DNA from: Octopus sinensis
Lineage: Eukaryota
Direction: 5' to 3'
Assembly (NCBI RefSeq): GCF_006345805.1
Contig: NC_042998.1
Span: 91,512,001 to 91,576,000, forward strand
DNA: 64,000 nucleotides
Position 1 is the stretch's first letter. Every line of letters starts with the position of its first letter. The position numbers and the translations under genes were made by a program. The notes under the pieces were generated by a model. It made no database searches and was not told the DNA's origin. It saw nothing but the letters and a program-made list of their open reading frames with translations. This document shows, in pieces, positions 22,754-64,000 of this stretch.

Positions 22754-22781
22754 ATGGATATTTGCATATACATACATACAT

Positions 22782-22817
<36 letters not shown>

Positions 22818-26490: not shown

Positions 26491-26506
26491 ATATATAAAT
26501 ATATGT

Positions 26507-27334: not shown

Positions 27335-28489
27335 GATTGTCACTACAATGTCAGTGTTGCTAATGTTGTAGTGTTAATCACAAGTCTACCTTCTTGTTTG
27401 GAGAAGGCAATAAATCCCCTTTCCACCATTGTAAATGAAATAATGGATCATTTTGGCTTATGGAATGAATACCTGCCAGTTTAATAAAGAAGAGATTCCA
27501 TTGAAATTTTGTCCTAGTTAGTCAAACAGAAGTATAGCCTCAACAAATTAAACTGTTAAAAACATTAGATTTCCAAGATAAGAAGCATGTTAATATTCTT
27601 CCACAAAAGCATCAACCCACATTTATTTCAAGATCAACATTTTCAACATATATTTAATTGGTTATATATTTTATTATGCTAGTTACATTTTCATCCTAAT
27701 GATCACAGATAAACTTATGACACAGAATTCTAACTTATCTTGAGATCAGATGTTATATTTCGATTTTGTGATTATGGCATAGTGTGTATGAAATTGTATT
27801 AGATACAATTTCACCCTTGCTTTGAACATCTAAAAATTAATGTAATGTAGCTGCTGAAATGTGATTTCTTAAGACATTTTCCTGTGAACAGCATTTTAAA
27901 AATGGCGTTTATAAAAAAAAAATTATCCAAAGTTTTCATTAAATATTTTGAATTTCTGAAGAGAGAAAAGAGAAAGTAAAATAAAATATTTGAAAATACT
28001 TATTTTCAAACAATTTCTTCAATAAAATTCTTAATTTTCTAATGCTGATGTATTATTAAATCAATACATTTTATTCCCATAAAGAAAAAGTGTAGTTATT
28101 TAAATTTGATGGAGAGAAAAACCACAAAGCTACAGATGAATTTTATATAGTTTCTAAATCTGCAATATTTAAAAGTAAAAATGAAATCTGGAATAGCTAC
28201 TTTCTATACACAACAGTTAACTACTATTTTGGTAAAATGCTCATGTCACATTTGATTACTAATTTTGATTATATTGTTATATAAATATATTCTTATTTTC
28301 TGCTATGACAATAAGTAGCACTTTATTAAAGTGATTTTTAATCCTTTTGAATTTTAAACTATGTTTTTTTTTCTGTTGCAATGGCTATTTTAAGATATTT
28401 AAAATGTATTTACTTTCATAAATTATATTCTTGTTGTGCTGAATAATCCATTATATATATATATATATATGTACTTCCTTTTTCAAATA

Positions 28490-28730
28490 TGTCTTTCATG
28501 TGGCTTTTTTTTTTGTTTATTTCAGGTAAGATACCAATTTCTTTGGTGAAATTTCTGTTATCGGATGTCAAAATGAGTCTACATAATTTATTCTTCTGCA
28601 GTATCATTACTTATACATATGTGAGAAAAAATTATAGATATTCAACAGAATGTGTGTATTAAATTAAAAAAAAACTTTATTTCAAAGTCTTACCAAAATT
28701 ATAATTTAATTTTCTACATCTCAGGTATGT
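28490..28730 (+). promoter_or_regulatory. Candidate recursive splice site plus cryptic RS-exon upstream of exon A
   Basis: ttttttttttgtttatttCAG|GTAAGA at 28525/28526; second ttaattttctacatctCAG|GTATGT at 28724/28725; paralogue at 44270-44552. Confidence 0.55.
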
Positions 28731-29249
28731 AATCTTATAATTTCTATTTTCAATGATTAAAATGTGTTTTAAGGAGGTAAAGTAAAAATTGAATCATTCT
28801 TGATTTAAAATTAATTTCTTTTAATCAGTTTTTATTTTCAGATATTAACTCACATTTTTGTTTATTATTTATGAAATATATATTGGTCTGTCTTCATATT
28901 ATTTTGCCTGACAAAATTATAAAAGGCTAAGTCTGAAAGTTGTGGAATATTTAGCTTTTTTTTTAGACAATACTAAAAATAAAAGAATTGTTAAAGCCAT
29001 AATTTAGTACAAATATCACTGTTTTTTTAAAACAATTTTAGGACTTCAACAATTAATGTTTGCTGTGGTATGCACATAAAAACATACACATATTTATAAA
29101 TTAAATGCATGTATTTTTATATGTATACATACATACATACATATGCATACTTATATATATATATATATATATAATATATATACTTTTCTCTCTCTCTTTT
29201 GCTCTTTATGTATTTGTATGAATATGTATATATGTATGTATATCTCAAG

Positions 29250-30650: not shown

Positions 30651-31160
30651 ATATTTGTATACAATAAATGAATTTAATACAATACTCTAACATTATTATA
30701 ATCAAAAATAATATGGCTTCTCCTTTTCTTCTGCACACAATCAATTCAAAGTATACATAAAAAAATAATCAAAAATATGATGACAAATAAAGGTAGACAA
30801 TCGCAGTTTAGTTACCAGGGAAGAAGACATCTGAGGATGACTTCTGGTTTAATTGCATTGAAATTATGATGCATAAACCCTTCTAGACACTGTATGAGAC
30901 TAATTTAAACATATGCAAAATAAAATACTAGATACAGACACACAAAAGAAATTACAGTTATAATGTAAATAATTTATTTTCTCAGAAAACAATGGAAGAA
31001 ATAATGGATTTTTTTTCAATTGTTTCTTGTAAAATAATTATTTGCTTTTCATTTGAGACCAAATAATTATTTTGTTTTCAGGCATTATAAATAAATATGG
31101 AGACTAGATACTAAAGATGTTTTGAGAATATTTTCTTAAAAATTATTTAATTTATATTAG

Positions 31161-34100
31161 GTGATTTGCCAGTTTATACAGAAATAAAAGAGAGAGTGGA
31201 AGAACAGGAAAAGACCAAAGATATACCAGGAGTAGTATTACAAAAGGCTTCAGTAATAGATGAAATTTCACATCCATTTGAAATAACTAAAGGTGTAAAT
31301 ATGGATTTATCTTTCCAAATAACTTCTAAAGAAGTGGAATATTCTCCAGAGGAGATTGAAGTAGTCCAAGATACTGTGAAACAGAAGGCTATTGAAATAG
31401 ATATAGGAAAACCACATGAAGTTTATGTCACTCAAAGAGAACAAATAACAATTGAACCAATTAGTAAAGAATTGACACAAGTTGATATCAAACCTGAAAC
31501 TAAAGAGGAAGTTTCTATTCAACTTGACGTTGGAGAGAAACCTGTTGAGAAAACAGAAGTTATATCTATTGATATTGGTAAACCTGAGAAACCAGTCAGT
31601 GAAATTGAAGTGCAAGTTGCACCTCATGTACCTGAGATAATTTCTATACAAAAAGAACAGATAACTACAGATAAAAGGGAAATTTTAATTAGCAAAGAAG
31701 AAACTGAAGTTATTCCAGAAATTTCTACAGTTGATATTGTGCAAGAAAGTACAGTTCAAATGGAAGCTAAAGAAATGGAAATTAAAGAGAAGAAACCACA
31801 ACTTACTGATATTACAACAATTTCTACTGCTGTAATGAAGGAAAAACAACCAGAAGAAGAAGTGAAACCTGTTTCTGAAATTCAACCAACAGATGTATCT
31901 GAGATGGTAATACCAGAGGAAGTTGAAACTGCTAAAGTTACCTCAATTATAACTACAAGCACTGAGGAAAGGAAGACCAAGATTTCTCCAGAGAAAATTA
32001 GTGATATTCCTGTGGAAATGGTATTATCAATTGACTCTAAGAAAGTCACATCTGAAGATCAGGTACCAATGGTTATAAAGACTGAACAGACATATACAAC
32101 AGGTGAAGAAGAGGTGGAGAAAGAAATTACAGTGCAGACATTGGAAATGCCATTACAAGACACAGTAACTGTAAAACCAGTGGAAGAAACTGGTATTCAA
32201 ATTTCTGTGAGTTCTACAAAAGCATCTGCTATTGAAGAAGCTCCTGTTGAAGATGTAACTGAGAAGGTTGTTGAAATCAGCAAGGAAAGTGAAATGAATC
32301 CTGTGAGTAAAGAAGTGAAAGATATCTCTGAAATGACCATTATAAGTGCTCCATCAGTAAGTGTTGTGAGTACAGCTGAAGAAGAACTTTCTGAAGAAGA
32401 ATTCTTTGATATTCCATCAACTGAAGAAAAGAAAGTGGAACCTAAAGAGGTTTCTGATGAGGAAAAAGACACATTAGTTAGTGTACGTGATGAGATTCGC
32501 ACAGCAGAAGATGTGCTAGTTGATGCTATTGAACATATCACTGATATAGAGAAAGAACATGTAGAGATACCTATGTCTGCAGCTGTTGTTAGCACTGATC
32601 TTCAAGAGATTACAATTAAAAAGACAATTCCTACTGAAATTGTACATGAGCAAGTAGTTTCAAAGGAACCTGTTGAAAAGACAGAAGTTCATATTAAACC
32701 AGAAACTAAAGAGGAAGTTTCCATTCAACTTGATATTGGTACTAATCCTGTTGAGAAATCAGAAGTTATATCCATTGATATTGGTAAACAAGAAAACCCA
32801 GTCAGTGAAATTGAAATGCAAGTGGCACCTCAAATACCTGAGATAATTTCTATACAAAAAGAACAGATATCTAGAGATAAGAGGGAAATTTTAATTAGCA
32901 AAGAAGAAACTGAAGTTATTCCAGTAATTTCTACATTTGATATTGTGCCAGAAAGTACAATTCAGATCGAAGCTAAAGAAATGGAAATTAAAGAGAAGAA
33001 ACCACAAATTACTGATATTACTACAATTTCAACGACTGTATTGAAGGAGAAACAACCAGAAGAAGAAGTGAAACCTATTTCTGAAATTCAACCAACAGAT
33101 GTATCTGAGACGGTAATACCAGAGGAAGTTGAAACTGCTAAAGTTACCTCAATTATAACTACAAGCACTGAGGAACGGAAGACCAAGATTTCTCCAGAGA
33201 AAATTAGTGATATTCCTGTGGAAATGGTATTATCAATTGACTCTAAGAAAGTCACATCTGAAGATCAGGTACCAATGGTTATAAAGACTGAAAAGACATA
33301 TACAACAGGTGAAAAAGAGGTGGAGAAAGAAATTACAGTGCAGACATTGGAAATGCCATTACAAGACACAGTAACTGTAAAACCAGTGGAAGAAACCGGT
33401 ATTCAAATTTCTATGAGTTCTACAAAAGCATCTACTATTGAAGAAGCTCCCATTGAAGATGTAACTGAGAAGGTTGTTGAAATCAGCAAGGAAAGTGAAA
33501 TGAATCCTGTGAGTAAAGAAGTGAAAGCTATCTCTGAAATGACGTTATAAGTGCTCCATCAGTAAGTGTTGTGAGTACAGCTGAAGAAGAACTTTCTGAA
33601 GAAGAATTCTTTGATATTCCATCAACTGAAGAAAAGAAAGTGGAACCTAAAGAAGTTTCTGATGAGGAAAAAGCCACATCAGTTAGTGTACGTGATGAGA
33701 TTCGCACAGCAGAAGATGTGTTAGTTGATGCTATTGAACATATCACTGATATAGAGAAAGAACATGTAGAGATACCTGTGTCTGCACCTGTTGTTAGCAC
33801 TGATCTTCAAGAGATTACAATTAAAGAGACAATTCCTACTGAAATTGTACATGAAGAAGTAGTTTCAAAGGAACCTGTTGAGAAGAGAGAAGTAGAAATT
33901 AAACCTGAAACTATAGAGGAAATGTCTATTCAACTTGAAATTGGTGCTAAGCCTGTTGAGAAAACAGAAGTTGTATCCATTGATATTGGTAAACCAGAAA
34001 AAGTTGTCACTGAAATTAAAAAGACAGAGGTTGATATTAAACCAGAAGCTAAAGAGGAAATGTCTATTCAACTTGACATTGGTGCTAACCCTGTTGAGAA

Positions 34101-37100
34101 AACAGAAGTTGTATCCATTGATATTGGTAAACCAGAAAAAGTTGTCACTGAAATTAAAAAGACAGAGGTTGATATTAAACCAGAAGCTAAAGAGGAAATG
34201 TATATTCAACTTGACATTGGTGCTAACCCTGTTGAGAAAACAGAAGTTGTATCCATTGATATTGGTAAACCAGAAAAAGTTGTCACTGAAATTAAAAAGA
34301 CAGAGGTTGATATTAAACCAGAAGCTAAAGAGGAAATGTCTATTCAACTTGACATTGGTGCTAACCCTGTTGAGAAAACAGAAGTTGTATCCATTGATAT
34401 TGGTAAACCAGAAAAAGTTGTCACTGAAATTAAAAAGACAGAGGTTGATATTAAACCTGAAACTAAAGAGGAAGTCTCTATCCAACTTGACATTGGTGCT
34501 AAACCTGTTGAGAAAACAGAGGTCATCTCCATTGATGTTGGGAAACCAGAAAAAGTGGTAACTAAAATTGAAAAAACAGAGGTTGATATTAAACCAGAAT
34601 CTAAAGAGGAAGTGGCTATCCAACTTGATATTGGTGCTAACCCTGTTGAGAAAAGAGAAGTCATGTCTATTGATGTTGGTAAACGTGAGATACCAGTCGG
34701 TGAAATCGAAATGCAAGTGGCACCTCAAGTACCTGAAGTTATTTCTATACAAAAAGAACAGATAACTACAGATAAGAAGGAAATTTTAATTAGCAAAGAA
34801 GAAACTGAAGTTATTCCAGAAATTTCTACAGTTGATATTGTGCAAGAAAGTACAGTTCAAATGGAAGCTAAAGAAATGGAAATTAAAGAGAAGAAACCAC
34901 AAATTACTGATATTACAACAATTTCTACTGCTGTAATGAAGGAAAAACAACCAGAAGAAGAAGTGAAACCTGTTTCTGAAATTCAACCAACTGATGTATC
35001 TGAGACGGTAATACCAGAGGAAGTTGAAACTGCTAAAGTTACCTCAATTATAACTACAAGCACTGAGGAACGAAAGACTAAGATTTCTCCAGAGAAAATT
35101 AGTGATATTCCTGTGGAAATGGTTGTATCAATTGACTCTAAGGAAGTCACATCTGAAGATCAGGTACCAATGGTTATAAAGACTGAACAGACATATACAA
35201 CAGGTGAAGAAGAGGTGGAGAAAGAAATTACAGTGCAGACATTGGAAATGCCATTACAAGACACAGTAACTGTAAAACCAGTGGAAGAAACCGGTATTCA
35301 AATTTCTGTGAGTTCTACAAAAGCATCTGCTATTGAAGAAGCTCCCGTTGAAGATGTTACTGATAAGGTTGTTGAAATCAGCAAGGAAAGTGAAATGAAT
35401 CCTGTGAGTAAAGAAGTGAAAGATATCTCTGAAATGACCATTATAAGTGCTCCATCAGTAAGTGTTGTGAGTACAGCTGAAGAAGAACTTTCTGAAGAAG
35501 AATTCTTTGATATTCCATCAACTGAAGAAAAGAAAGTGGAACCTAAAGAAGTTTCTGATGAGGAAAAAGACACATCAGTTAGTGTACGTGATGAGATTCG
35601 CACAGCAGAAGATGTGCTAGTTGATGCTATTGAACATATCACTGATATAGAGAAAGAACATGTAGAGATACCTATGTCTGCACCTGTTGTTAGCACTGAT
35701 CTTCAAGAGATTACAATTAAAGAGACAATTCCTACTGAAATTGTACATGAAGAAGCAGTTTCAATGGAACCTGTTGAGAAGGCAGGAGTAGAAATTAAAC
35801 CAGAAACTAAAGAGGAAATGTCTATTCAACTTGACGTTGGTGCTAACCCTGTTGAGAAAACAGAAGTTGTATCCATTAATATTGGTAAACCAGAAAAAGT
35901 TGTCACTGAAATTAAAAAGACAGAGGTTGATATTAAACCTGAAACTAAAGAGGAAGTCTCTATTCAATTTGACATTGGTGCTAAACCTGTTGAGAAAACA
36001 GAAGTTATATCTATTGATATTGGTAAACCTGAGAAACCAGTCAGTGAAATTGAAATGCAAGTGGCACCTCAATTACCTGAAGTTGTTTCTATACAAAAAG
36101 AACAGATAACTATTGATAAGAAGGAAATTATCATTAGCAAAGAAGAAACCGAAGTTATTCCAGAAATGTCTACAGTTGATATTGTGCAAGAAAGTACAAT
36201 TCAAATGGAAGCTAAAGAAATGGAAATTAAAGAGAAGAAACCACAACTTACTGATATTACAGCAATTTCTACTGCTGTAATGAAGGAAAAACAACCAGAA
36301 GAAGAAGTGAAACCTGTTTCTGAAATTCAACCAATAGATGTATCTGAGACGGTAATACCAGAGAAAGTTGAAACTGCTAAAGTTACTTCAATTATAACTA
36401 CAAGCACTGAGGAAAGGAAGACCAAGATTTCTCCAGAGAAAATTAGTGATATTCCTGTGGAAATGGTATTATCAATTGACTCTAAGAAAGTCACATCTGA
36501 AGATCAGTTACCAATGGTTATAAAGACTGAACAGACATATACAACAGGTGAAGAGGAGGTAGAGAAAGAAATCACAGTGCAGACATTGGAAATGCCATTA
36601 CAAGACACAGTAACTGTAAAACCAGTGGAAGAAACTGGTATTCAAATTTCTGTGAGTTCTACAAAAGCATCTGCTATTGAAGAAGCCCCGTTGAAGATGT
36701 TACTGATATGGTTGTCGAAATCAGCAAGGAAAGTGAAATGAATCCTGTGAGTAAAGAAGTGAAAGATATCTCTGAAATGACCATTATAAGTGCTCCATCA
36801 GTAAGTGTTGTGAGTACAGCTGAAGAAGAACTTTCTGAAGAAGAATTCTTTGATATTCCATCAACTGAAGAAAAGAAAGTGGAACCTAAAGAGGTTTCTG
36901 ATGAAGAAAAAGACACATCAGTTAGTGTACGTGATGAGATTCGCACAGCAGAAGATGTGTTAGTTGATGCTATTGAACATATCACTGATATAGAAAAAGA
37001 ACATGTAGAGATACCTGTGTCTGCACCTGTTGTTAGCACTGATCTTCAAGAGATTACAATTAAAGAGACAATTCCTACTGAAATTGTACATGAGCAAGTA

Positions 37101-39282
37101 ATTTCAGAGGAACCTGTTGAGAAGACTGAAGTAGAAATTAAACCAGAAATGAAAGAGGAAATGTCTATTCAACTTGAAATTGGTGCTAAGCCTGTTGAGA
37201 AAACAGAAGTTGTATCCATTGATATTGGTAAACCAGAAAAAGTTGTCACTGAAATTAAAAAGACAGAGGTTGATATTAAACCTGAAACTAAAGAGGAAGT
37301 CTCTATCCAACTTGACATTGGTGCTAAACCTGTTGAGAAAACAGAGGTCATCTCCATTGATGTTGGGAAACCAGAAAAAGTGGTAACTAAAATTGAAAAG
37401 ACAGAGGTTGATATTAAACCTGAAACTAAAGAGGAAGTTTCTATTCAACTTGACATTGGAGAGAAACCTGTTGAGAAAACAGAAGTTATATCTATTGATA
37501 TTGGTAAACCTGAGAAACCAGTCAGTGAAATTGAAGTGGAAGTTGCACCTCATGTACCTGAGATAATTTCTATACAAAAAGAACAGATAATTTCAGATAA
37601 AAGGGAAATTTTAATTAGCAAAGAAGAAACTGAAGTTATTCCAGAAATTTCTACAGTTGATATTGTGCAAGAAAGTACAGTTCAAATGGAAGCTAAAGAA
37701 ATGGAAATTAAAGAGAAGAAACCGCAAATTACTGATATTACAACAATTTCTACTGCTGTAATGAAGGAAAAACAACCAGAAGAAGAAGTGAAACCTGTTT
37801 CTGAAGTTCAACCAACAGATGTATCTGAGACGGTAATACCAGAGGAAGTTGAAACTGCTAAAGTTACCTCAATTATAACTACAAGCACTGAGGAAAGGAA
37901 GACCAAGATTTCTCCAGAGAAAATTAGTGATATTCCTGTGGAAATGGTATTATCAATTGACTCTAAGAAAGTCACATCTGAAGATCAGTTACCAATGGTT
38001 ATAAAGACTGAACAGACATATACAACAGGTGAAGAAGAGGTAGAGAAAGAAATTACAGTGCAGACATTGGAAATGCCATTACAAGACACAGTAACTGTAA
38101 AACCAGTGGAAGAAACTGGTATTCAGATTTCTGTGAGTTCTACAAAAGCATCTGCTATTGAAGAAGCCCCTGTTGAAGATGTAACTGATATGGTAGTCGA
38201 AATCAGCAAGGAAAGTGAAATGAATCCTGTGAGTAAAGAAGTGAAAGATATCTCTGAAATGACCATTATAAGTGCTCCATCAGTAAGTGTTGTGAGTACA
38301 GCTGAAGAAGAACTTTCTGAAGAAGAATTCTTTGATATTCCATCAACTGAAGAAAAGAAAGTGGAACCTAAAGAGGTTTCTGATGAGGAAAAAGACACAT
38401 CAGTTAGTGTACGTGATGAGATTCGCACAGCAGAAGATGTGTTAGTTGATGCTATTGAACATATCACTGATATAGAGAAAGAACATGTAGAGATACCTGT
38501 GTCTGCAGCTGTTATTAGCACTGATCTTCAAGAGATTACAGTTAAAGAGACAATTCCTACTGAAATTGTACATGAAGAAGTCGTTTCAAAGGAACCTGTT
38601 GAGAAGATAGAAGTAGAAATTAAACCAGAAATTAAAGAGGAAATGTCTATTCAACTTGAAATTGGTGCTAAGCCTGTTGAGAAAACAGAAGTTGTATCCA
38701 TTGATATTGGTAAACCAGAAAAAGTTGTCACTGAAATTAAAAAGACAGAGGTTGATATTAAACCTGAAACTAAAGAGGAAGTCTCAATCCAACTTGACAT
38801 TGGTGATAAACCTGTTGAGAAAACAGAGGTCATCTCCATTGATGTTGGGAAACCAGAAAAAGTTGTCACTGAAATTGAAAAGACTGAGGTTGAAATTATA
38901 CCAGAAAGTAAAGAAGAAGTCTCTATCCAACTTGACGTTGGTGCTAAACCTGTTGAGAAAATAGAAGTTATCTCCATTGATATTGGTAAACCTGAGAAAC
39001 CAGTGAGTGAAATTGAAATGCATTTTGCACCTCAAGTCCCTGAGGTTATTTCTCTAGAAAAAGAAGCAATAACTACTGATGAGAAGGAAATTATCATTAG
39101 CCATGAAGAAATCGAAGTTACTCCAGAAATGTCTATAGTTGATATTGTGCCAGAAAGTACAGTCCCTGTTGAAGTCAAAGATTTGGAAATTAAAGAGAAA
39201 GAATCACCATTTACTGAGCTTAAATTGAGCATTCCTGGTCCTGACACATTTGAATCATTGAAAGAAGGTGTTGAAGACATAG
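31161..39282 (+). CDS. Giant internal exon A (about 2700 aa), PEVK-like repeat region of a giant cytoskeletal protein (titin-like; identity unresolved)
   Basis: Acceptor tttatattag at 31160 and donor ATAG|gtatct at 39282/39283, both phase 1. ORFs 31166-33550, 33571-36741 and 36708-39344 step through frames by -1 at single-base losses (about 33544 and 36690). Restoring 2 nt gives 8124 nt, which is 2708 codons. Confidence 0.85.
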
Positions 39283-39608
39283 GTATCTTGTGGATCCTCA
39301 TGCAGGATTTATTACGTGCTTCTGCACTCACTGCCGCCGCTTGACTTTACACAAGCATCAATATCTGTAGCTTACCAATGCCTCAATAGCATGCTGTTCA
39401 ATGTCTATTACCATGTCTTTAACTACTGTATTTGCTTATATGTCTCTTTCAGCTCAATAATTTGTCAGTAGTTTTGTTGGGTCTTTGTTGTATTTGAAAA
39501 TATTGTCCATATATGGAAAAAAAAATTGCTTTCCTTGTATTATTATGTAGTGCATGTAGCTTTGCCTACAATGATCTTAGGTGACATAAAATTGATTGTC
39601 TGTCCCTT

Positions 39609-43050: not shown

Positions 43051-44269
43051 TGAAATTTTCAATTATAATTGAGTAGTTGACAAGAGAAATGAGAAAGTAA
43101 AATAATAAAACAGAATATTTTAAGAAAATTTGTATTCTGCTTTGTTCAACAATGTATTTAAGCTAATGAAGGAGCAGTTACATGGTTGTATGACCTGGTA
43201 AAAGCAACCAAATTCCTTCATATCCCATTGTCTTAAAAAGGTAGATACTGGATAATAGGTTGCTTGTAAACAAGTAAAAGACAACATAATCATGGCTAAA
43301 AGGTCTTCGGTCAGAAGTCTGCTGCATTAAAACTGACTTGTGGCTAAACAACATTTACTGCTATCACAACAACTCCATCGGTAGCACACTGTATATTTGT
43401 TAAAAAGATATCAAATGCTAATGCATTGCTGTGTCTCATATATAATTGGAGTTGGGAATATATTTAGTACTTACTTATAAATGATTACTTTGCTAAAAAG
43501 AAAAGTTACAGCTAATTAATTAATGCTGTTTAGTTTTATTTTCATATGAAAATCATTTTCATATAATTATACTTGCTTCTTGTAATTGTAGATATCTATG
43601 TGCTTTATAACTTTCAACGCTAAATTTGTTTTGGATTTAAGAACAACTCTAATTCTTTATTATGTAAATGATTTATGTTATATAAATCAAACAATATTTC
43701 TGCATTAAATAATATTAACAAATGATATTTAAATGTTCAAAAGTAAGGAGTTGTTTGCAATTGTGGGAAGTTCAAAACAATTGTATTTTATTCTCCTGTT
43801 CCTTAGTTAAAATGATAAAATTCATTGGTAGTTGTTTTAGTTGTTGAAAGTTCATTTTTTTTTTTTAATATTTGAAGATCTATCTAACTCATTTCAACAG
43901 CTAAATTCGTATAACTTCTCAATACACAATAATCAAAAGCAAAAATACAATTTCCAGTGGACATGTTATGTACATGATACCTAATATTTGAGAAAATTGT
44001 GTATGTTCCATTTGGTTGCAGAATATTATTTAACTTTTATGCAAATATTTTCTTATTTCATGCCACTATAATAAATGACTCTATTAAAAATTTCTTTATC
44101 TTTTATTTTTAAATATTAATCCTTCTTTTTTCATTGCAACTTTATTTTAAGATATTTATTATTATAGTTAATGGCTTGTAATGTTGATTAATTATACCTA
44201 ACTACCTACCTACCTACATACATACATGCATACATGTAAATACATATATTCATATCTTCTTTTTGAACA

Positions 44270-44552
44270 AATGTCTTTCACTTGGTTTTTTTTTTTTATT
44301 TCAGGTAAGATATCAACTTCTTTTATGGAACATCTTTTATCAATTACCAAATTGAATCTACTTAATAAAGTTATACTACAGTATTGTTACATACTCGTTA
44401 TGGTATTGTTACATACCCATTATGGTATCTGTACTCAAAATATGTAGATATGTGGGAAAAAGTGAGAAATATTCAACAGGGAAAGTATATCTTAAAGTCT
44501 AATTAAAATGTTTACCAAAGTTATGACTTAATTTTCTGCATCTCAGGTATGT
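44270..44552 (+). promoter_or_regulatory. Candidate recursive splice site plus cryptic RS-exon upstream of exon B, paralogue of 28490-28730
   Basis: ttttttttttttatttCAG|GTAAGA at 44304/44305; ttaattttctgcatctCAG|GTATGT at 44546/44547. Confidence 0.55.
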
Positions 44553-45596
44553 AAACTCATAATTTCTATTTTCAAGAATTAAGATTTTATTTATTATAAG
44601 CAGGTTTGGTAGAAAACTAAAACATTCTTGATTTATGATTATTTTTTTTTTTGTTCATATTTTTATTTTATCCTCATTTATATTCACCCTGTCTTATTTT
44701 CAGATAGACAATCACATTGCAGTTTACTATTGATAGTTTGATTTGTTTCATTTTTTTTCCTCAGAAGAAATTCAACAATAATATTTCTGAAATTTAGAAA
44801 ACATTTTGTTTCTGTTTTTTTTTCTTCTTTAAATATTAAAGCAAATGTTTTGTTGTATCTTAGGAAGGTCATTATGCCAATAATAAACATATGCAGTCCA
44901 TATGTTTATTATTGATATCATGACCCTCCTGAGATATAACAAAATATATTTCAACACATGAGTTCACATCAAGAATCTTGCAAACCAAATAATGTAACTA
45001 TTACTGTTTTTTAATTTCATAAAGATATCAATTTTGTTGAGTTACATATGAATAATTTTAAACTTTTTTGATACCAGCCTACCTTGACTAATATAATTAG
45101 GACTTAATTTATTAAAGATGATGAAAGTCAGACATGTGTAACTGTTATTATAAGGAGGTTTTACATGGAACAAAAGAATATCTTTTTTTATATTTTACTT
45201 TATGCAATTTACATCTCTACTTGCCATGATATCATACTCCTTGAGTAAAATATTAAGGTACTCTTAAGATAAAAACTATAAGTTACTAAGAAAATAGTTG
45301 AAATAAATTTACTTGTTAAATGACTGGATATGAAATAGATATATTTAAAATATAACAAAAAACTTGAGGTTTAATTATTATTTAACTATATATTTAGAAT
45401 AATTCTACAATCAGAAACATTTGAATAAATAAACTATAAATGGAAGTTTTTGAAAAGAATTGTGATAAAAATTGTGAACACTTTGGAAAATTAGGTCTAA
45501 ATTCAAAGACAAGGAATCTATGTCACTTCTCAGTTATATTAAAGCCAACTAGCTATACAATTCAATCAATAACCAACAAATCTGTAATATATCTAA

Positions 45597-48003: not shown

Positions 48004-48117
48004 AGACATTATATGTATTTTTTTCATTGATCAAGGGGGTATATATACATGGAGACAAAACAAAATGTTTTCTTTTATATGAGAAAGTATTTTTTAAAAT
48101 TGTTTGATTTATATTAG

Positions 48118-51100
48118 GTGATTTGCCAGTTCCTACAGAAATAAAAGGAACAGAAGAATATAGTGAAGAAAATATTACAGAAATATCAGAGAAGGTTTTA
48201 AAGGAAGCTAAGGAAACAAAAGATTATTCACCCAAATTGCAAGCAACTACAGGCATTGAAATGGATATCACTGTACAAAGAGCTTCATTTGTAGTAGAAC
48301 CAAGTACATATGACATAGTAGAACATACTGTAGAGGCAAAAGATGTTGAAAAAGAAATAGGAAAATCAGATGATGTTTCTATTTTACAAAGGGAACAAAT
48401 AACGATAGAACCAACAAAAATTCAGAGTCAAACAGTTAAAAATATACAAATTGAAACTAAAGATTCAAAAGAATATGGCATTAAACCTGAAAGTAAACAA
48501 GAAGTCTCTATCCAACTTGATATTGGTGCTAAACCTGTTCAGAAAACAGAAGTCATATCTATTGATATTGGTAAACCTGAGAAACCAGTCAGTGAATTTG
48601 AAATGCAAGTAGCACCTGCAGTATCTGAGGTTATTTCTGTAGAAAAAGAACAGATAACAACTGATAAGAAGTTAATTATCATTAGCAAAGAAGAAACTGA
48701 AGTTATTCCAGAAATTTCTACAGTTGATATTGTGCCAGAAAGTACAATCCAGATTGAAGCTAAAGAAATGGAAATTAAAGAGAAGAAACCACAAATTACT
48801 GATATTACAGCAATTTCTACTGCTGTTATGAAAGAGAAACAACCAGAAGAAGATATATCTGAGACGGTAATACCAGAGAAAGTTGAAACTGCTAAAGTTA
48901 CCTCAATTATAACTACAAGCACTGAGGAACGGAAGACTAAGATTTCTCCAGAGAAAATTAGTGATATTCCTGTGGAAATGACAATATCAATTGACTCTAA
49001 GAAAGTCACATCTGAAGATCAGGTACCAATGATTATAAAGACTGAACAGACATATACAACAGGTGAAGAAGAAGTGGAGAAAGAAGTTACAGTGCAGACA
49101 TTGGAGATGCCATTACAAGACACAGTAACTGTAAAACCAGCGGAAAAAACTGGTATTCAAATTTCTGTGAGTTCTACAAAAGCATCTGCTATTGAAGAAG
49201 TTCCTGTTGAAGATGTAACTGATAAGGTTGTTGAAATCAGCAAGGAAAGTGAAATCATTCCTGTGAGTAAAGAAGTGAAAGGTATCTCTGAAATGACCAT
49301 TATAAGTGCTCCATCAGTAAGCGTTGTCAGTACAGCCGAAGAAAAACTTTCTGAAGAAGAATTCTTTGATATTCCATCAACTGAAGAAAAGAAAGTGGAA
49401 CCGAAAGAGGTTTTTGATGAAGAAAAAGAAACATCAGTTAGTGTATGTGATGAGATTCACACAGCAAAAGATGTGTTAGATGATGCTATTGAACATATCA
49501 CTGATATAGAGAAAGAACATGTAGAGATACCTATGTCTACAGCTGTTGTTAGCACTGATCTTCAAGAGATTACAATTAAAGAAACAATTCCTTCTGAAAC
49601 TGTACATGAAGAAGTAGTTTCAGAGGAACCTGTTGAGGAGACAGAAATAGAAATTAAACCAGAAACTAAAGAGGAAATGTCTATTCAAATTGACATTGGT
49701 GCTAAACCTGTTGAGAAAACAGAAGTTGTATCCATTGATATTGGTAAACCAGAAAAAGTTGTCACTGAAATTGAAAAGACAGAGGTTGATATTAAACCAG
49801 AAATGAGAAAGGAAATGTCTATCCAACTTGAGATTTCTGATAAACCTGTTGAGACAACAGAGATTACCAGAATTGATATTGGTAAACCAGAAGACTTAGT
49901 CACTGAAATTGAAAAGACAGAGGTTGATGTTAAACCTAAAACTAAAGAGAAAGTGGCTATCCAACTTGAGATTTCTGATAAACCTGTTGAGAAAACAGAG
50001 ATTACCAGAATTGATATTGGTAAACCAGAAGAAGTAGTCACTGAAATTGAAAAGACAGAGGTTGATATTAAACCTGAAACTAAAGGGGAAGTGGCTATCC
50101 AACTTGAGATTTCTGATAGACCTGTTGAGACAACAGAGATTACTGGAATTGATATTGGTAAGCCAGAGGTAGTCTTCACTGAAATTGAAAAGACAGAGGT
50201 TGATATTAAACCAGAATCTAAAGAGGAAGTGGCTATCCAACTTGAGATTTCTGATAAACCTGTTGAGAAAACAGAGATTACTAGAATTGATATCGGTAAA
50301 CCAGAAGAAGTAGTCACTGAAATTGAAAAGACAGAGGTTGATATTAAACCTGAATTTAAAGAGGAAGTGGCTATCCAACATGAGATATCTGATAAACCTG
50401 TTGAGACAACAGAGATTACCAGAATTGATATAGGTAAACCAGAAGAAGTTGTCACTGAAATTGAAGAGACAGAGGTTGATATTAAACCTGAAACTAAAGA
50501 GGAAGTGGCTATCCAACTTGAGATTTCTGATAAACCTGTTGAGAAAACAGAGATTACCAGAATTGATATTGGTAAACCAGAAGAAGTAGTGACTGAAATT
50601 GAAAAGACAGAGGTTGATATTAAACCTGAAACTAATGAGGAAGTGTCTATCCAACTTGAGATTTCTGATAAACCTGTTGAGACAACAGAGATTACCAGAA
50701 TTGATATTGGTAAACCAGAAGAAGTAGTCACTAAAGTTGAAAAGACAGAGGTTGATATTAAACCTGAAACTAAAGAGGAAGTGGCTATCCAACTTGAGAT
50801 TTCTGAGAAACCTGTTCAGAAAACAGAGATTACCAGTATCGATATTGGTAAACCAGAAGAAGTAGTCATTGAAATTGAAAAGACAGAGGTTGATATTAAA
50901 CCAGAATCTAAAGAGGAAGTGGCTATCGAACATGAGATATCTGATAAACCTGTTGAGACTACAGAGATTACCAGAATTGATATTGGTAAACCAGAAGTAG
51001 TCACTGAAATTGAAAAGACAGAGGTGGATATTAAACCTGAAACCAAAGAGGAAGTGGCTATCCAACTTGAGATTTCTGATAAACCTGTTGAGAAAACAGA

Positions 51101-54100
51101 GATTACCAGTATCGATATTGGTAAACCAGAAGAAATAGTCACTGAAATTGAAAAGACAGAGGTTGATATTAAACCTGCAACTAAAGAGGAAGTGGCTATC
51201 CAATTTGAGATTTCTGATAAACCTGTTGAGAAAACAGAGATTACCAGTATCGATATTGGTAAACCAGAAGAAATAGTCACTGAAATTGAAAAGACAGAGG
51301 TTCATATTAAACCTGCAACTAAAGAGGAAGTGGCTATCCAATTTGAGATTTCTGATAAACCTGTTGAGAAAACAGAGATTACCAGAATTGATATTGGTAA
51401 ACCAGAAGAAGTAGTGACTGAAATTGAAAAGACAGAGGTTGATATTAAACCTGAAACTAATGAGGAAGTGTCTATCCAACTTGAGATTTCTGATAAACCT
51501 GTTGAGACAACAGAGATTACCAGAATTGATATTGGTAAACCAGAAGAAGTAGTCACTAAAGTTGAAAAGACAGAGGTTGATATTAAACCTGAAACTAAAG
51601 AGGAAGTGGCTATCCAACTTGAGATTTCTGAGAAACCTGTTCAGAAAACAGAGATTACCAGTATCGATATTGGTAAACCAGAAGAAGTAGTCATTGAAAT
51701 TGAAAAGACAGAGGTTGATATTAAACCAGAATCTAAAGAGGAAGTGGCTATCGAACATGAGATTCTGATAAACCTGTTGAGAAAACAGAGATTACCAGAA
51801 TTGATATTGGTAAACCAGAAGTAGTCACTGAAATTGAAAAGACAGAGGTGGATATTAAACCTGAAACTAAAGAGGAAGTGGCTATCCAACTTGAGATTTC
51901 TGATAAATCTGTTGAGAAAGCAGAGATTACCAGAATTGATATTGGTAAACCAGAAGAAGTACGTACTGAAATTGAAAAGACGGATATTGATATTAAACCA
52001 GAATGTAAAGAGGAAGTGGCTATCCAACTTGAGATTTCTGATAAACCTGTTGAGACAACAGAGATTACCAGAATTGATATTGGTAAACCAGAAGACTTAG
52101 TCACTGAAATTGAAAAGACAGAGGTTGATGTTAAACCTAAAACTAAAGAGAAAGTGGCTATCCAACTTGAGATTTCTGATAAACCTGTTAGGACAACAGA
52201 GATTACCAGAATTGATATTGGTAAACCAGAAGAAGTAGTCACTAAAGTTGAAAAGACAGAGATTGATATTAAACCTGAAACTGAAGAGGAAGTGACAATC
52301 CAATTTGGGATTTCTGAGAAACCTGTTCAGAAAACAGAGATTACCAGTATCGATATTGGTAAACCAGAAGAAGTAGTCATTGAAATTGAAAAGACAGAGG
52401 TTGATATTAAACCAGAATCTAAAGAGGAAGTGGCTATCGAACATGAGATATCTGATAAACCTGTTGAGACTACAGAGATTACCAGAATTGATATTGGTAA
52501 ACCAGAAGTAGTCACTGAAATTGAAAAGACAGAGGTGGATATTAAACCTGAAACCAGAGAGGAAGTGGCTATCCAACTTGAGATTTCTGATAAACCTGTT
52601 GAGAAAACAGAGATTACCAGTATCGATATTGGTAAACCAGAAGAAATAGTCACTGAAATTGAAAAGACAGAGGTTGATATTAAACCTGCAACTAAAGAGG
52701 AAGTGGCTATCCAATTTGAGATTTCTGATAAACCTGTTGAGAAAACAGAGATTACCAGAATTGATATTGGTAAACCAGAAGAAGTAGTCACTGAAATTGA
52801 AAAGACAGAGGTGGATATTAAACCTGAAACTAAAGAGGAAGTGGCTATCCAACTTGAGATTTCTGATAAATCTGTTGAGAAAGCAGAGATTACCAGAATT
52901 GATATTGGTAAACCAGAAGAAGTACGTACTGAAATTGAAAAGACGGATATTGATATTAAACCAGAATGTAAAGAGGAAGTGGCTATCCAACTTGAGATTT
53001 CTGATAAACCTGTTGAGACAACAGAGATTACCAGAATTGATATTGGTAAACCAGAAGACTTAGTCACTGAAATTGAAAAGACAGAGGTTGATGTTAAACC
53101 TAAAACTAAAGAGAAGTGGCTATCCACTTGAGATTTCTGATAAACCTGTTAGGAAACAGAGATTACCAGAATTGATATTGGTAAACCAGAAGAAGTAGTC
53201 ACTAAATTGAAAAGACAGAGATTGATATTAAACCTGAAACTAAAGAGGAAGTGACAATCAATTTGAGATTTCTGATAAACCTGTTCAGAAAACAGAGATT
53301 ACCAGAATCGATATTGGTAAACCAGAAGAAATAGTCACTGAAATTGAAAAGACAGAGGTTGATATTATACCTGAAACTAAAGAGGAAGTGGCTATCCAAC
53401 TTGAGATTTCTGATAAATCTGTTGAGAAAACAGAGATTACCAGAATTGATATTGGTAAACCAGAAGAAGTACGTACTGAAATTGAAAAGACAGATATTGA
53501 TATTAAACCAGAATCTAAAGAGGAAGTGGCTATCCAACTTGAGATTTCTGATAAACCTTTTGAGAAAACAGAGATTACCAGAATTGACATTGGTAAACCA
53601 GAAGAAGTAATCACTGAAATTGAAAAGACAGAGGTTGATATTAAACCTGAAACTAAAGAGGAAGTGGCTATCCAATTTGAGATTTCTGATAAACCTGTTG
53701 AGACAACAGAGATTACCAGAATTGATATTGGTAAACCAGAAGAAGTTGTCACTGAAATTGAAAAGACAGAGGTTGATATTAAACCTGAAACTAAAGAAGA
53801 AGTGGCAATCCAATTAGAGATTTCTGATAAATTTGTTGAGAAAACAGAGATTACCAGAATTGATATTGGTAAACCAGAAGAAGTAGTCACTGAAATTGAA
53901 AAGACAGAGGTTGATATTAAACCTGAAACTAAAGAGGAAGTGGCTATCCAATTTGAGATTTCTGATAAACCTGTTGAGACAACAGAGATTACCAGAATTG
54001 ATATAGGGAAACCAGAAGAAGTAGTCACTGAAATTGAAAAGACAGAGGTTGATATTAAACCTGAAACTAAAGAGGAAGTGGCTATCCAATTTGAGATTTC

Positions 54101-63100: not shown

Positions 63101-64000
63101 GAAGTAGTCACTGAAATTGAAAAGACCGTCGTTGATATTAAACCTGAAACTAAAGAGGAAGTGGCTATCCAATTTGAGATTTCTGATAAACCTGTTGAGA
63201 CAACAGAGATTACCAGAATTGATATTGGTAAACCAGAAGAAGTTGTCACTGAAATTGAAAAGACAGAGGTTGATATTAAACCTGAAACAAAAGAGGAAGT
63301 GGCAATCCAATTTGAGATTTCTGATAAATCTGTTGAGAAAACAGAGATTACCAGAATTAATATTGGTAAACCAGAAGAAGTTGTCACTGAAATTGAAAAG
63401 ACAGAGGTTGATATTAAACCTGAAACTAAAGAGGAAGTTGCTATCGAAATTGTGATTTGTGATAAATCTGTTGAGAAAACAGAGATTACCAGAATTGATA
63501 TTGGTAAACTAGAAGAAGTAGTGACTGAAATTGAAAAGACAGAGTTTGATATTAAACCTGAAACTAAAGAGGAAGTGGCTATCCAACTTGAGATTTCTGA
63601 TAAACCCGTTGAGAATACAGAGATTACTAGAATCGATATTGTTAAACCAGAAGAAGTAGTCACTGAAATCGAAAAGACAGAGGTCGATATTAAACCTGAA
63701 ACTAAAGAGGAAGTGGCTATCCAACTTGAGATTTCTGATAAACCTGTTGAGAAAACAGAGATTACCAGAATTGTTATTGGTGAATCAGAAGAAGTAGTCC
63801 CTGAATTTGAGAAGAAAGATCTTGATATTAAACCTGAAGCAAAACAGGAAGTGGCTATCCAACATGAGATTTCTGATAAACCTGTTGAGACAACAGAGAT
63901 TACCAGAATTGATATTGGGAAACCAGAAGAAGTAGTCACTGAAATTGAAAAGACAAAGGTTGATATTAAACCTGAAACTAAAGAGGAAGTGTCTATCCAA
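48118..64000 (+). CDS. Giant exon B (at least 15.9 kb, runs off the window), paralogue of exon A
   Basis: Acceptor tttatattag|GTGATTTGCCAGTT matches exon A. Intact ORF 48123-51824; many 1-nt deletions 51764-59030; the same frame at 59144 and 63968 suggests an unbroken frame to the window end. Confidence 0.85.
49690..64000 (+). repeat. Coding tandem array of 138-bp (46-aa) units, about 104 copies in the window
   Basis: Unit KPVEKTEITRIDIG-KPEEVVTEIEKTEVDI-KPETKEEVAIQLEISD; copy number estimated as 14310/138. Confidence 0.95.

What the first reader, a model, noticed from the sequence alone, without database searches (positions are those of the whole stretch)
28490..28730. Duplicated recursive-splice (ratchet point / RS-exon) module in front of each giant exon
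Seen: a long poly-T tract ends in CAG|GTAAGA (28525/28526), so a strong acceptor regenerates a near-consensus donor. A second CAG|GTATGT lies 199 nt later. The same pair recurs at 44304/44305 and 44546/44547 upstream of exon B. Between the paralogues the 48 nt around the second site differ at only about 4 positions, while the spacer has indels (199 vs 242 nt, neither a multiple of 3) and a phase-1 stop (TAA 28660, TAG 44445). Established: Drosophila ratchet points and vertebrate RS sites are AG|GT motifs followed by a cryptic exon with a downstream donor, often with a premature stop. Inference: these modules may control stepwise intron removal or inclusion/NMD of the giant exons. I am not aware of recursive splicing being described in a mollusc.
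Basis: partly seen in the sequence, partly recalled or inferred. Interest (0 to 1): 0.8.

Follow-up and report, generated by a model that had tools for sequence, protein, structure and literature searches.

The report
Conserved recursive-splice-like cassette before giant exons
In front of each giant exon of an octopus-type muscle-protein gene lies a small module: a strong intron-end signal fused to an intron-start signal, then a second intron-start signal about 200 bases on. The module is conserved in another octopod and looks like the "recursive splicing" cassettes of flies and vertebrates, but no RNA data were available to show that it is used.

Summary
CAG|GTAAGA lies at 28525/28526 and 44304/44305, and CAG|GTATGT at 28724/28725 and 44546/44547. 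The spacers are 199 and 242 nt, each with a phase-1 stop. These four are the only such composite motifs in the window on either strand.

My first rival was that the poly-T tract encodes a signal peptide (ATG 28489, MSFMWLFFLFIS+G, phase 1, matching the phase-1 giant-exon acceptor). Comparative data undercut this. A full HMMER search found two relatives, in Argonauta hians and Sepia pharaonis.

- **Argonauta:** the locus holds at least four giant exons in tandem and three more copies of the module. All five copies keep a pyrimidine tract, an AG-free zone, a branch-point-like motif and YAG|GTAAG[AT]TA at site 1, and AG|GTATGTAA at site 2. The spacer varies (183-242 nt) and has phase-1 stops in all copies. 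The ATG and its frame are not kept.
- **Sepia:** the homologous giant exon runs into I-set Ig exons, so these are probably internal exons of a muscle Ig protein.

Site 1 therefore fits a ratchet point, and site 2 fits the donor of a cryptic RS-exon (a donor only, not a second ratchet point). Use in RNA is untested, and an alternative first exon remains possible.

The parts
28483..28525 (+). Copy A, site 1, acceptor half: branch-point-like TTCAT (A at -27), T-rich pyrimidine tract (17 of 20) and CAG
   Evidence: The AG-free zone upstream is 131 nt. The block is conserved in 5 of 5 module copies, with pyrimidine content kept while the sequence turns over. It also reads as ATG 28489..G 28525 = MSFMWLFFLFIS+G.
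28526..28537 (+). Copy A, site 1, donor half: GTAAGATACCAA
   Evidence: AG|GTAAG.TA.CA is invariant in all five copies from two species. It matches 8 of 9 positions of CAG|GTAAGT.
28526..28724 (+). Copy A, putative cryptic RS-exon, 199 nt, with phase-1 stop TAA at 28660
   Evidence: Length and sequence are not conserved (199, 242, 187, 183 and 229 nt). Cross-species identity falls to 0-0.35 inside it.
28725..28763 (+). Copy A, site 2: donor GTATGTAA plus a conserved block downstream (ATAATTTCTATTTTCA)
   Evidence: AG|GTATGTAA is invariant in 5 of 5 copies. Cross-species identity peaks at 0.72. It is donor-like only.
31123..31160 (+). Acceptor region of giant exon A (…gatttatattAG), weak pyrimidine tract (10 of 20)
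   Evidence: Conserved with copy B, with Argonauta and, in part, with Sepia.
31161..39282 (+). Giant exon A, phase 1 at both ends (G|GT GAT TTG … GAC ATA G|). It encodes E/K/V/T/I/P-rich repeats including 46-aa units
   Evidence: Single-base frame breaks after 33542 and 36689. 49% identical to the A. hians protein P0001.
39283..39488 (+). Weak donor of giant exon A (TAG|GTATCT) and a conserved donor-proximal intronic block
   Evidence: 67-71% identical to the sequence after three Argonauta giant exons, including past their stop codons.
44262..44304 (+). Copy B, site 1, acceptor half: TTCAC (A at -24), T12 tract and CAG
   Evidence: Also reads as ATG 44271..G 44304 = MSFTWFFFFIS+G.
44305..44546 (+). 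Copy B, donor half GTAAGATATCAA and putative cryptic RS-exon, 242 nt, with phase-1 stop TAG at 44445
44547..44588 (+). Copy B, site 2: donor GTATGTAA plus the conserved block downstream
48080..48117 (+). Acceptor region of giant exon B (…gatttatattAG)
48118..64000 (+). Giant exon B. It starts G|GT GAT TTG CCA, carries 104 copies of a 138-nt repeat from 49639, and runs off the window
   Evidence: Many frame changes between about 51.8 and 59 kb.

Best explanation
The window holds two tandem giant exons (A 31161-39282, B 48118 to beyond 64000). They are probably internal exons of one cephalopod muscle Ig-domain (titin/obscurin-like) gene, and they encode a PEVK-like repeat region. The intron in front of each giant exon carries a conserved cryptic-exon cassette of the recursive-splicing type.

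Site 1 is a strong 3' splice site (branch point, long pyrimidine tract, YAG) fused directly to a near-consensus 5' splice site (GTAAGA here, GTAAGT in Argonauta). Site 2, 183-242 nt downstream, is a plain 5' splice site (GTATGTAA).

Proposed mechanism (inferred, not shown):
1. The roughly 200-nt segment is recognised by exon definition between the site-1 acceptor and the site-2 donor.
2. The weak donor of the upstream exon (TAG|GTATCT or TAG|GTATTT) is spliced to site 1.
3. This rebuilds …TAG|GTAAG[AT], a much better donor, at the junction.
4. The rebuilt donor is joined to the weak acceptor of the next giant exon, and the cryptic exon is discarded with the lariat.
5. If site 2 is used instead, the cassette stays in the mRNA and puts a stop codon in phase 1. 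This holds for all five copies and would give NMD or a truncated isoform.

Shown: the sequence architecture, its recurrence and its selective conservation. Inferred: that A and B belong to one transcript, the order of splicing steps, and any regulatory use.
For: 1. Site 1 has both halves in all five copies (window A and B; Argonauta u1-u3).
- 16-18 of 20 pyrimidines upstream, with the tract sequence turning over.
- AG-free zones of 46-137 nt, against a background median of 14 nt.
- A yUnAy motif with its A at -24 to -29 in four copies and at -17/-22 in the fifth.
- AG|GTAAG.TA.CA invariant.

2. Site 2 AG|GTATGTAA is invariant in 5 of 5 copies.

3. Cross-species identity peaks at exactly the two cores (0.81 and 0.72). 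It falls to 0-0.35 in the spacer and flanks, and the rest of the introns does not align. This matches the description of ratchet points in PMC8605326: SA|SD ultraconserved, cryptic exon poorly conserved and out of frame.

4. Spacer lengths are 199, 242, 187, 183 and 229 nt, with no common frame. There are stops in phase 1 in all five.

5. Giant exons look internal.
- They are phase 1-1.
- Their donors are conserved as GA[CT]ATAG|GTAT in octopods and CTAG|GTATTT in Sepia. These are weak (6 of 9 consensus matches, 1.8-3.3 bits), against 8.8-10.4 bits for the regenerated site-1 donor.
- The sequence after the donor is conserved even where a stop codon follows at once, so that conservation is not coding.

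6. The A. hians gene model joins …VKDIG directly to DLPDVSEI…, skipping the module.

7. In Sepia the homologous giant exon is followed on the same strand by I-set Ig exons (Pfam E = 9e-22 and 6.5e-10). A gene model spans both.

8. No AG lies within 131-137 nt upstream of site 1 in the window copies, and the phase-1 frame there is closed further up. An ordinary internal coding exon ending at site 1 is therefore excluded.
Against: - No RNA evidence of any kind: no junction reads, lariats or transcript assemblies could be reached.
- The host introns are short for classical recursive splicing (8.8 kb here, 3.7-5.8 kb in Argonauta). Drosophila recursive introns are 11.3 kb or longer and average 45 kb.
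- The cryptic exon is about 200 nt, against about 50 nt in flies.
- By a rough position weight matrix (frequencies recalled from memory), the regenerated site-1 donor is not stronger than site 2 in the window (8.8 against 10.2 bits). It is only modestly stronger in Argonauta (10.4 against 8.8-9.2).
- For copy A, no upstream exon is seen in 28 kb.
- Both window copies have an in-phase ATG followed by a hydrophobic peptide whose phase matches the giant-exon acceptor. Only 4 of 291 G|GTR sites in the window have this feature.
- The Argonauta and Sepia gene models may be ab initio predictions.
- Paralogues within a species are not independent, so the effective number of lineages is about 3-4.
Confidence: 0.55

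Rival explanations
1. Alternative first exon with an internal promoter. Each module would be a copy of the gene's original promoter plus a short, mostly non-coding first exon that ends at the site-1 donor. Transcripts could then start in front of any giant exon, as with internal promoters of titin-like genes. Site 1 would act only as a donor.
For: - No AG lies 46-137 nt upstream of site 1, so anything ending there must be a first exon or a recursive site.
- TATA-like strings lie about 60-100 nt upstream in all copies, and TATTTTAAGATATTTA is 16/16 identical between A and B.
- Copy A has no detectable exon in the 28 kb upstream.
- ATGTCTT is present in 3 of 5 copies.
- The A. hians model starts inside a giant exon, so no upstream link was annotated for e1.
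Against: - It leaves the acceptor half unexplained: 80-90% pyrimidine content kept through sequence turnover, a well-placed branch-point motif, and YAG.
- It leaves the invariant site-2 donor about 200 nt downstream unexplained.
- Cross-species conservation upstream of site 1 stops after about 45 nt, with no conserved promoter block.
- TATA-like strings are trivial in a 26-30% GC region.
Confidence: 0.17
2. Separate tandem genes for secreted repeat proteins. Each would have a tiny exon 1 (start codon plus signal peptide, with the poly-T tract coding Phe/Leu), one intron, and one giant exon. This is the layout of the silkworm fibroin heavy-chain gene. Site 1 would be the ordinary exon-1 donor.
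For: - ATG 28489 gives MSFMWLFFLFIS+G (37 nt) and ATG 44271 gives MSFTWFFFFIS+G (34 nt). Both are phase 1, and the two differ by a 3-nt indel.
- The giant-exon acceptors are phase 1 (G|GT GAT…), giving MSF…ISGDLPVY….
- Only 4 of 291 G|GTR sites in the window have an in-phase ATG with an uncharged hydrophobic peptide, and two of the four are these sites.
- In copy A a stop follows the giant exon at 39344.
Against: - In Argonauta the homologous ATG is ATT (u1) or ATA (u2). In u3 it is 35 nt from the donor, which gives phase 2. The phase-1 frame of u1 has stops 8 and 13 codons upstream.
- Any T-rich tract translates as hydrophobic, so the hydrophobic peptide carries little weight.
- The homologous exon in Sepia continues into intracellular-type I-set Ig exons.
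- Giant exons end in a conserved phase-1 G|GTAT, and the conserved sequence beyond it is non-coding.
- Site 2 is unexplained.
Confidence: 0.06
3. Ordinary regulated cassette without recursion. The segment from site 1 to site 2 would be a poison exon or an alternative C-terminal exon. It would be included in some tissues to end the protein after a given giant exon, and the GTAAG at its start would not be used as a donor.
For: - A good acceptor and a good donor lie 183-242 nt apart, which is an ideal exon size.
- A phase-1 stop is present in all five copies.
- Conserved intronic flanks are typical of regulated exons.
- Titin-like genes are known to make truncated isoforms (general knowledge).
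Against: - It does not explain why the first 5-12 nt of the cassette are an invariant near-consensus donor (GTAAG.TA.CA) in all copies while the rest of the cassette drifts. The chance of GTAAG directly after an acceptor is about 1e-3 at this base composition.
- The encoded tails are not conserved, and u3 stops after 5 codons.
Confidence: 0.14

Closest known systems
Drosophila ratchet points with cryptic RS-exons (Ubx, kuz, Bx and others; Duff et al. bioRxiv 10.1101/006163; Joseph & Lai, PMC8605326)
   Same: - A strong pyrimidine tract and AG fused to GTAAG[TA].
- The SA|SD core is highly conserved, while the cryptic exon is poorly conserved and out of frame.
- A downstream donor defines the cryptic exon.
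- Inclusion would introduce a stop codon.
- Several ratchet points can occur in one gene.
   Different: - Fly recursive introns are 11-133 kb, and the segments removed are 2.6 kb or longer. Here the introns are 3.7-8.8 kb and some segments are only 0.8-1.3 kb.
- The fly cryptic exon is about 50 nt. Here it is 183-242 nt.
- The module is part of a tandem duplication unit, one per giant exon.
- The phylum is different (Mollusca).
- There is no RNA proof.
Vertebrate RS-exons (Sibley et al. 2015; EJC-repressed RS-exons, PMC6224609)
   Same: The logic of exon definition followed by competition between the reconstituted 5' splice site and the RS-exon donor. Included cryptic RS-exons carry premature stops. 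The exon size of about 200 nt is closer to vertebrate exons.
   Different: Classical vertebrate cases sit in introns longer than 150 kb in brain genes, although lariat data extend recursive splicing to smaller introns (PMC10156609). Here the flanking exons are giant (8 kb to more than 16 kb), so their own exon definition is implausible.
Dual-specificity splice sites (AG|GURAG used as either a 3' or a 5' site; general knowledge, not checked in the library)
   Same: One AG|GTAAG sequence that could serve as acceptor or as donor.
   Different: Dual-specificity use needs an exon that ends at the site. Here no acceptor exists within 46-137 nt upstream and the frame is closed, so only a first exon could end there.
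Alternatively spliced PEVK spring exons of titin and Drosophila Sallimus (general knowledge; context in PMC12063666)
   Same: A repeat-rich E/K/V/P spring region encoded by symmetric-phase exons next to I-set Ig exons, in a gene type whose spring length is tuned by exon choice.
   Different: There is no sequence homology to titin PEVK, and no Pfam family matches. The exons are giant and tandemly duplicated, each with its own conserved intronic cassette.
Fibroin-heavy-chain-type genes (tiny signal-peptide exon, one intron, one giant repeat exon; general knowledge)
   Same: A short ATG-containing hydrophobic ORF ends in a phase-1 donor 2.6-3.8 kb upstream of a giant repetitive exon in both window copies.
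   Different: Start codon and frame are not conserved in Argonauta. The homologue is linked to Ig exons in Sepia. The giant exons have conserved 3' donors.

Membership tests
Recursive splice site / ratchet point with RS-exon | 3' splice site (pyrimidine tract, AG) directly abutting a 5' splice site (GTRAGT) | tested here: met
   CAG|GTAAGA at 28525/6 and 44304/5, with 17 of 20 pyrimidines upstream, AG-free zones of 131 and 137 nt, and yUnAy at -27 and -24. The same holds in the three Argonauta copies.
Recursive splice site / ratchet point with RS-exon | SA|SD core conserved in evolution while the flanking intron and cryptic exon are not | tested here: met
   AG|GTAAG.TA.CA is invariant in 5 of 5 copies from two octopod lineages. 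Cross-species identity is 0.81 at the core against 0-0.35 in the spacer and flanks, and the rest of the intron cannot be aligned.
Recursive splice site / ratchet point with RS-exon | Downstream 5' splice site that defines a cryptic exon, out of frame or carrying a premature stop | tested here: met
   AG|GTATGTAA lies 183-242 nt downstream in 5 of 5 copies. Spacer lengths modulo 3 are 1, 2, 1, 0 and 1. Phase-1 stops occur in all copies.
Recursive splice site / ratchet point with RS-exon | Regenerated donor stronger than the RS-exon donor | tested here: inconclusive
   With a rough matrix recalled from memory: window 8.8 against 10.2 bits, Argonauta 10.4 against 8.8-9.2 bits. Matches to the U1-binding consensus are 7 of 9 against 8 of 9, and 8 of 9 against 7 of 9. 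MaxEnt or species-specific models were not available.
Recursive splice site / ratchet point with RS-exon | Lies inside an intron, with an upstream exon donor to splice from | tested here: inconclusive
   Copy B lies 5.0 kb downstream of the conserved phase-1 donor of giant exon A. Argonauta and Sepia gene models treat such exons as internal. For copy A no upstream exon was found in 28 kb. Transcript continuity is not shown.
Recursive splice site / ratchet point with RS-exon | Host intron very long (11 kb or more in flies; typically more than 150 kb in vertebrates) | tested here: not met
   The A-to-B intron is 8.8 kb, and the Argonauta introns are 5.8, 5.2 and 3.7 kb. The intron before copy A is 28 kb or more only if its upstream exon lies outside the window. 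Lariat data in human show recursive splicing in smaller introns too, so this is typical rather than strictly defining.
Recursive splice site / ratchet point with RS-exon | RNA intermediates: exon-to-ratchet-point junction reads, lariats from the ratchet point, saw-tooth read density | not testable with these tools
   No RNA-seq or transcript collection for this species could be queried. The three word-indexed protein searches found nothing.
Signal-peptide first exon of a secreted repeat protein | Start codon and reading frame up to the donor conserved among homologues | tested here: not met
   Present in the window copies A and B. In Argonauta the codon is ATT or ATA, or the ATG is out of phase (35 nt), and there are in-frame stops in u1.
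Signal-peptide first exon of a secreted repeat protein | No upstream or downstream coding exons of an intracellular protein in the same transcript | tested here: not met
   The Sepia homologue continues into I-set Ig exons. Giant exons end in conserved phase-1 donors.

The most novel reading that the evidence does not exclude
The modules would be stepping stones for splicing a tandem array of giant exons that are too long for exon definition. Each zero-length site 1 replaces the weak donor of the preceding giant exon with a consensus donor. That donor can then choose between the weak acceptor of the next giant exon (inclusion) and the strong site 1 of the following module (skipping). All giant exons are phase 1-1, so any subset could be assembled. 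This would give muscle-specific spring lengths by iterated recursive splicing. It would be the first recursive-splicing system in Lophotrochozoa and one with a combinatorial role rather than a role in removing long introns.
Probability: 0.25. Interest if true: 0.8.

Novelty: new member of a known kind. Interest (0 to 1): 0.55.

Why it matters
Recursive splicing has been demonstrated in insects and vertebrates. The searched library holds no report for molluscs. This is a candidate found from sequence alone and backed by comparative evidence, since the module is retained in two octopod lineages.

If confirmed, it would suggest that the ratchet-point/RS-exon design is older or more often re-invented than thought. 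It would also place that design in a new context: short introns between giant, tandemly duplicated exons with weak splice sites in a muscle spring protein. This bears on how spliceosomes handle exons of 8 kb to more than 16 kb, and on how spring length might be tuned.

The work also corrects the likely gene structure at this locus: internal exons of an Ig-domain muscle gene rather than separate genes.

Tried and rejected
1. **Signal-peptide exon 1 idea.** This was my first reading, from ATG 28489 and 44271, phase 1, and a 3-nt indel. I downgraded it after the Argonauta copies lacked the ATG or the frame and Sepia linked the exon to Ig exons.

2. **Word-indexed protein searches.** I tried the spliced N-terminus, the first 795 aa of exon A, and a 148-aa low-repeat segment. 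None returned a hit. Only the full HMMER scan found relatives.

3. **Coding exon between the two sites or ending at site 2.** Every frame has stops, and the phase-1 frame before site 2 has no in-frame ATG (and manual reading).

4. **Minus-strand gene or splice sites at the module.** There are no composite motifs on the minus strand and no convincing acceptor there.

5. **Transposon origin of the module.** Rejected because the copies keep the same order, orientation and position relative to the giant exons in both species.

6. **Docking/selector-type RNA pairing.** I searched for pairing between the conserved donor-proximal block and the rest of each intron with RNAduplex. The best duplexes fell in unrelated GC-richer repeats and at inconsistent positions.

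7. **Hidden upstream exons.** A Pfam scan of all plus-strand stop-free segments of 50 aa or more in 1-28450 gave no family.

8. **Module in Sepia.** I looked for it upstream of the Sepia giant exon, but only 1.2 kb of upstream sequence was available and no composite motif was present.

Full report
**1. Observation**

- Copy A, site 1: a T10 tract, G, TTTATTT and CAG|GTAAGA, boundary 28525/28526.
- Copy A, site 2: TTTTCTACATCTCAG|GTATGT, boundary 28724/28725, 199 nt further on.
- Copy B: a T12 tract with CAG|GTAAGA at 44304/44305, and CAG|GTATGT at 44546/44547, 242 nt further on.
- The phase-1 stops TAA 28660 and TAG 44445 are in the stated frame. The 48 nt around site 2 differ at 5 positions.

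A scan for 9 or more pyrimidines in 14 nt followed by AG|GTRWG finds these four sites and nothing else in 64 kb on either strand. About 1.9 are expected per 40 kb of one strand. A single motif is therefore not rare. The pairing, the position and the conservation are what go beyond chance.

Blastn between the two upstream regions finds only three islands of similarity:
- around site 1 (28454-28587 with 44237-44366);
- around site 2 (28672-28822 with 44494-44650);
- at the giant-exon acceptors (31123-31190 with 48080-48147).

**2. Surroundings**

Giant exon A is 31161-39282, and giant exon B runs from 48118 past the end of the window. Both encode E/K/V/T/I/P-rich repeats. Exon B contains 104 copies of a 138-nt (46-aa) unit.

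Both exons start at …gatttatattAG|GT GAT TTG CCA, which is phase 1. Exon A ends at GAC ATA G|GTATCT, also phase 1, although the open frame reads on to a stop at 39344.

Exon A has two single-base frame breaks, after 33542 and 36689. Exon B has about eleven frame changes between 51.8 and 59 kb.

**3. A rival I took seriously**

The "poly-T tract" also reads as coding sequence.
- ATG 28489 gives MSFMWLFFLFIS+G (37 nt).
- ATG 44271 gives MSFTWFFFFIS+G (34 nt).
- Both are phase 1 and match the giant-exon acceptors. The spliced product would read MSF…ISGDLPVY…, like a signal peptide.
- Only 4 of 291 G|GTR sites in the window have an in-phase ATG followed by an uncharged hydrophobic peptide, and two of those four are these sites.

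On this reading site 1 would be an ordinary exon-1 donor of two tandem genes built like the fibroin heavy-chain gene.

**4. Relatives**

Three word-indexed protein searches found nothing. The full HMMER scan of 1.84 billion representative proteins found two relatives:
- P0001, 4426 aa, 49% identity, a hypothetical protein of Argonauta hians;
- P0002, 1135 aa, 29% identity, from Acanthosepion (Sepia) pharaonis.

I retrieved their loci as L001 and L002.

*Argonauta (L001).* The locus carries at least four giant exons in tandem: e0 ending at 4141, e1 9918-17531, e2 22756-28497, and e3 from about 32160. All are open and all begin FILG[DNE]…. The donor GA[CT]ATAG|GTAT was located at the ends of e0, e1 and e2; e3 runs off the locus.

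There are three further copies of the module. Site 1 / site 2 lie at 6691/6878, 21439/21622 and 31361/31590. The annotated model joins …VKDIG directly to DLPDVSEI…, that is, e1 to e2 across module u2.

*Sepia (L002).* The homologous giant exon starts at a related phase-1 acceptor (tttgatttgtaatAG|AT) and ends …SLKEDNLG|GTATTT in phase 1. I-set Ig exons follow on the same strand (Pfam E = 9e-22 and 6.5e-10), and a gene model spans both.

The giant exons are therefore most likely internal exons of a muscle-type Ig protein with a PEVK-like spring. They are not stand-alone secreted-protein genes.

**5. What the five module copies show**

*Site 1*:
- All copies keep 16-18 pyrimidines in the 20 nt before the AG, although the tract sequence itself changes (T10GTTTATTT, T12ATTT, TTTTCTGTTTTGTTTATTT, TTTATTTCATTTCCCTTTCGTTTT, TTTATCCTTTCTTTTTATTTT).
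- All have an AG-free zone of 46-137 nt, against a background median of 14 nt.
- Four copies have a yUnAy motif with its A at -24 to -29; the fifth has it at -17/-22.
- AG|GTAAG.TA.CA is invariant.

*Site 2:* AG|GTATGTAA is invariant. Position -3 is C, C, G, A and A, the pyrimidine tract is weak, and one copy has an AG two bases upstream. It is a donor, not a second composite site.

*Spacer:* 199, 242, 187, 183 and 229 nt, with stops in phase 1 in all five copies.

*Conservation profile:* cross-species identity peaks at 0.81 on site 1 and 0.72 on site 2, and drops to 0-0.35 between and around them. Elsewhere the introns do not align, apart from a donor-proximal block and the acceptor-proximal block.

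*The ATG:* the homologous position is ATT in u1 and ATA in u2. In u3 the ATG lies 35 nt from the donor, which gives phase 2. In u1 the phase-1 frame has stops 8 and 13 codons upstream. Selection has therefore kept pyrimidine content and splice cores, not a reading frame.

**6. Interpretation**

The pattern matches the published description of ratchet points with cryptic RS-exons (PMC8605326; Duff et al.):
- a tandem SA|SD core that is ultraconserved;
- a cryptic exon that is poorly conserved and out of frame;
- a downstream donor.

The flanking real splice sites are weak. The giant-exon donors TAG|GTATCT and TAG|GTATTT match 6 of 9 consensus positions and score 1.8-3.3 bits. The giant-exon acceptors have 10-12 of 20 pyrimidines. 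Splicing into site 1 would rebuild TAG|GTAAG[AT], which scores 8.8-10.4 bits (the matrix was recalled from memory and is rough).

I therefore favour the following sequence of events:
1. The roughly 200-nt cassette is recognised by exon definition.
2. The upstream exon is spliced to site 1.
3. The regenerated donor is re-spliced to the next giant exon.

Use of site 2 instead would give a stop-containing isoform.

**7. Caveats**

- There is no RNA evidence.
- The introns are short for classical recursive splicing (8.8 kb here, 3.7-5.8 kb in Argonauta). Fly recursive introns are 11.3 kb or longer. Lariat data in human do show recursive splicing in smaller introns.
- The cassette is about four times longer than in flies.
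- The two donors are of similar strength.
- Copy A has no visible upstream exon within 28 kb: no Pfam domain was found in any plus-strand stop-free segment of 50 aa or more.
- The gene models in the other species may be predictions only.
- Paralogues within a species are not independent replicates.

The main surviving rival is that the modules are duplicated promoter/first-exon units, with site 1 acting as a donor only. That rival does not explain the acceptor half of site 1, and it does not explain site 2.

**8. Novelty**

The searched literature holds no paper that links recursive splicing with cephalopods or molluscs beyond incidental mentions. If confirmed, this would be a new member of a known kind in a new phylum. 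Its context is unusual: one module per tandem giant exon. This allows the more novel "stepping-stone" reading given separately.

Noticed in passing
window 33542, 36689; 51800-59050: Giant exon A has two single-base deletions relative to its own internal repeats (…GAAATGA-CGTT…, …GCCCC-GTTG…). Exon B changes frame about eleven times. The Argonauta giant exons are uninterrupted for up to 2543 codons. These are either assembly indel errors in a repeat array or decay of these copies.
   Followed up: partly
window 39317-39488: An intronic block just after the donor of giant exon A is 67-71% identical to the sequence after three Argonauta giant exons, even where a stop codon follows the donor at once. 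It contains conserved GCTTCT.CACT..CTGC, ACCAATG and TCTCTTTCAG|C motifs. Its function is unknown. An RNAduplex search for a pairing partner gave nothing consistent.
   Followed up: partly
window 28489-28525 and 44271-44304: Both window copies of the pyrimidine tract read as an in-phase ATG plus a hydrophobic peptide (MSFMWLFFLFIS, MSFTWFFFFIS), compatible with the phase-1 giant-exon acceptor. This is not conserved in Argonauta. It is either coincidence or a lineage-specific alternative start.
   Followed up: yes
window 28386-28401 and 44143-44158: TATTTTAAGATATTTA is 16/16 identical between the two window copies, about 90-115 nt upstream of the ATG. It is not found in the Argonauta copies. 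It could be a TATA-like element or simply a slower-diverged AT-rich patch.
   Followed up: no
window 49639-64000 (also 33883-34684, 37117-37535, 38599-39018): An array of 138-nt (46-aa) repeats, 104 copies at 92% match, gives long stop-free frames on both strands (for example minus-strand ORFs of up to 999 aa). The antisense ORFs are by-products of the repeat, not genes.
   Followed up: partly
window 13423-15858; 11755-11953; 12359-12662; 12921-13220; 19175-19878; 47536-48003: Very long (TA)n microsatellites, one of 2.4 kb, push GC down to 14%. Similar tracts sit in the Argonauta introns.
   Followed up: no
window 5711-6215 and 6527-7007: The same two stop-free segments (…MLGISKHERLSSFSRFCLNMTDQD… and IITPSLTGKRKCNLIHASRQDY…) occur twice about 790 nt apart. 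This indicates a local tandem duplication.
   Followed up: no
window 22352-22753 and 45600-45995 (inverted); 20471-20550 and 45629-45707: A 400-nt element is 93% identical in inverted orientation between the region upstream of module A and the intron before giant exon B. It is probably an interspersed repeat.
   Followed up: no
window 46951-47595 (+), 26812-27030 (-); L001 7127-9235: Transposon-like ORFs lie in the introns: a 215-aa frame with C2H2-like CxxC…HxxxH strings, a …GRGRPRKTW…DL… tail typical of retroelement-associated ORFs (my recollection), and a 703-aa ORF in the Argonauta intron between module u1 and exon e1.
   Followed up: no
L002 1187-16311: The Sepia pharaonis homologue appears as one giant exon that is itself broken by many frame changes between about 5.4 and 13.4 kb. 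The deposited annotation splits it into two gene models (10001-13408, and 13653 onward). Together these suggest assembly indel errors and an under-annotated giant muscle gene.
   Followed up: partly
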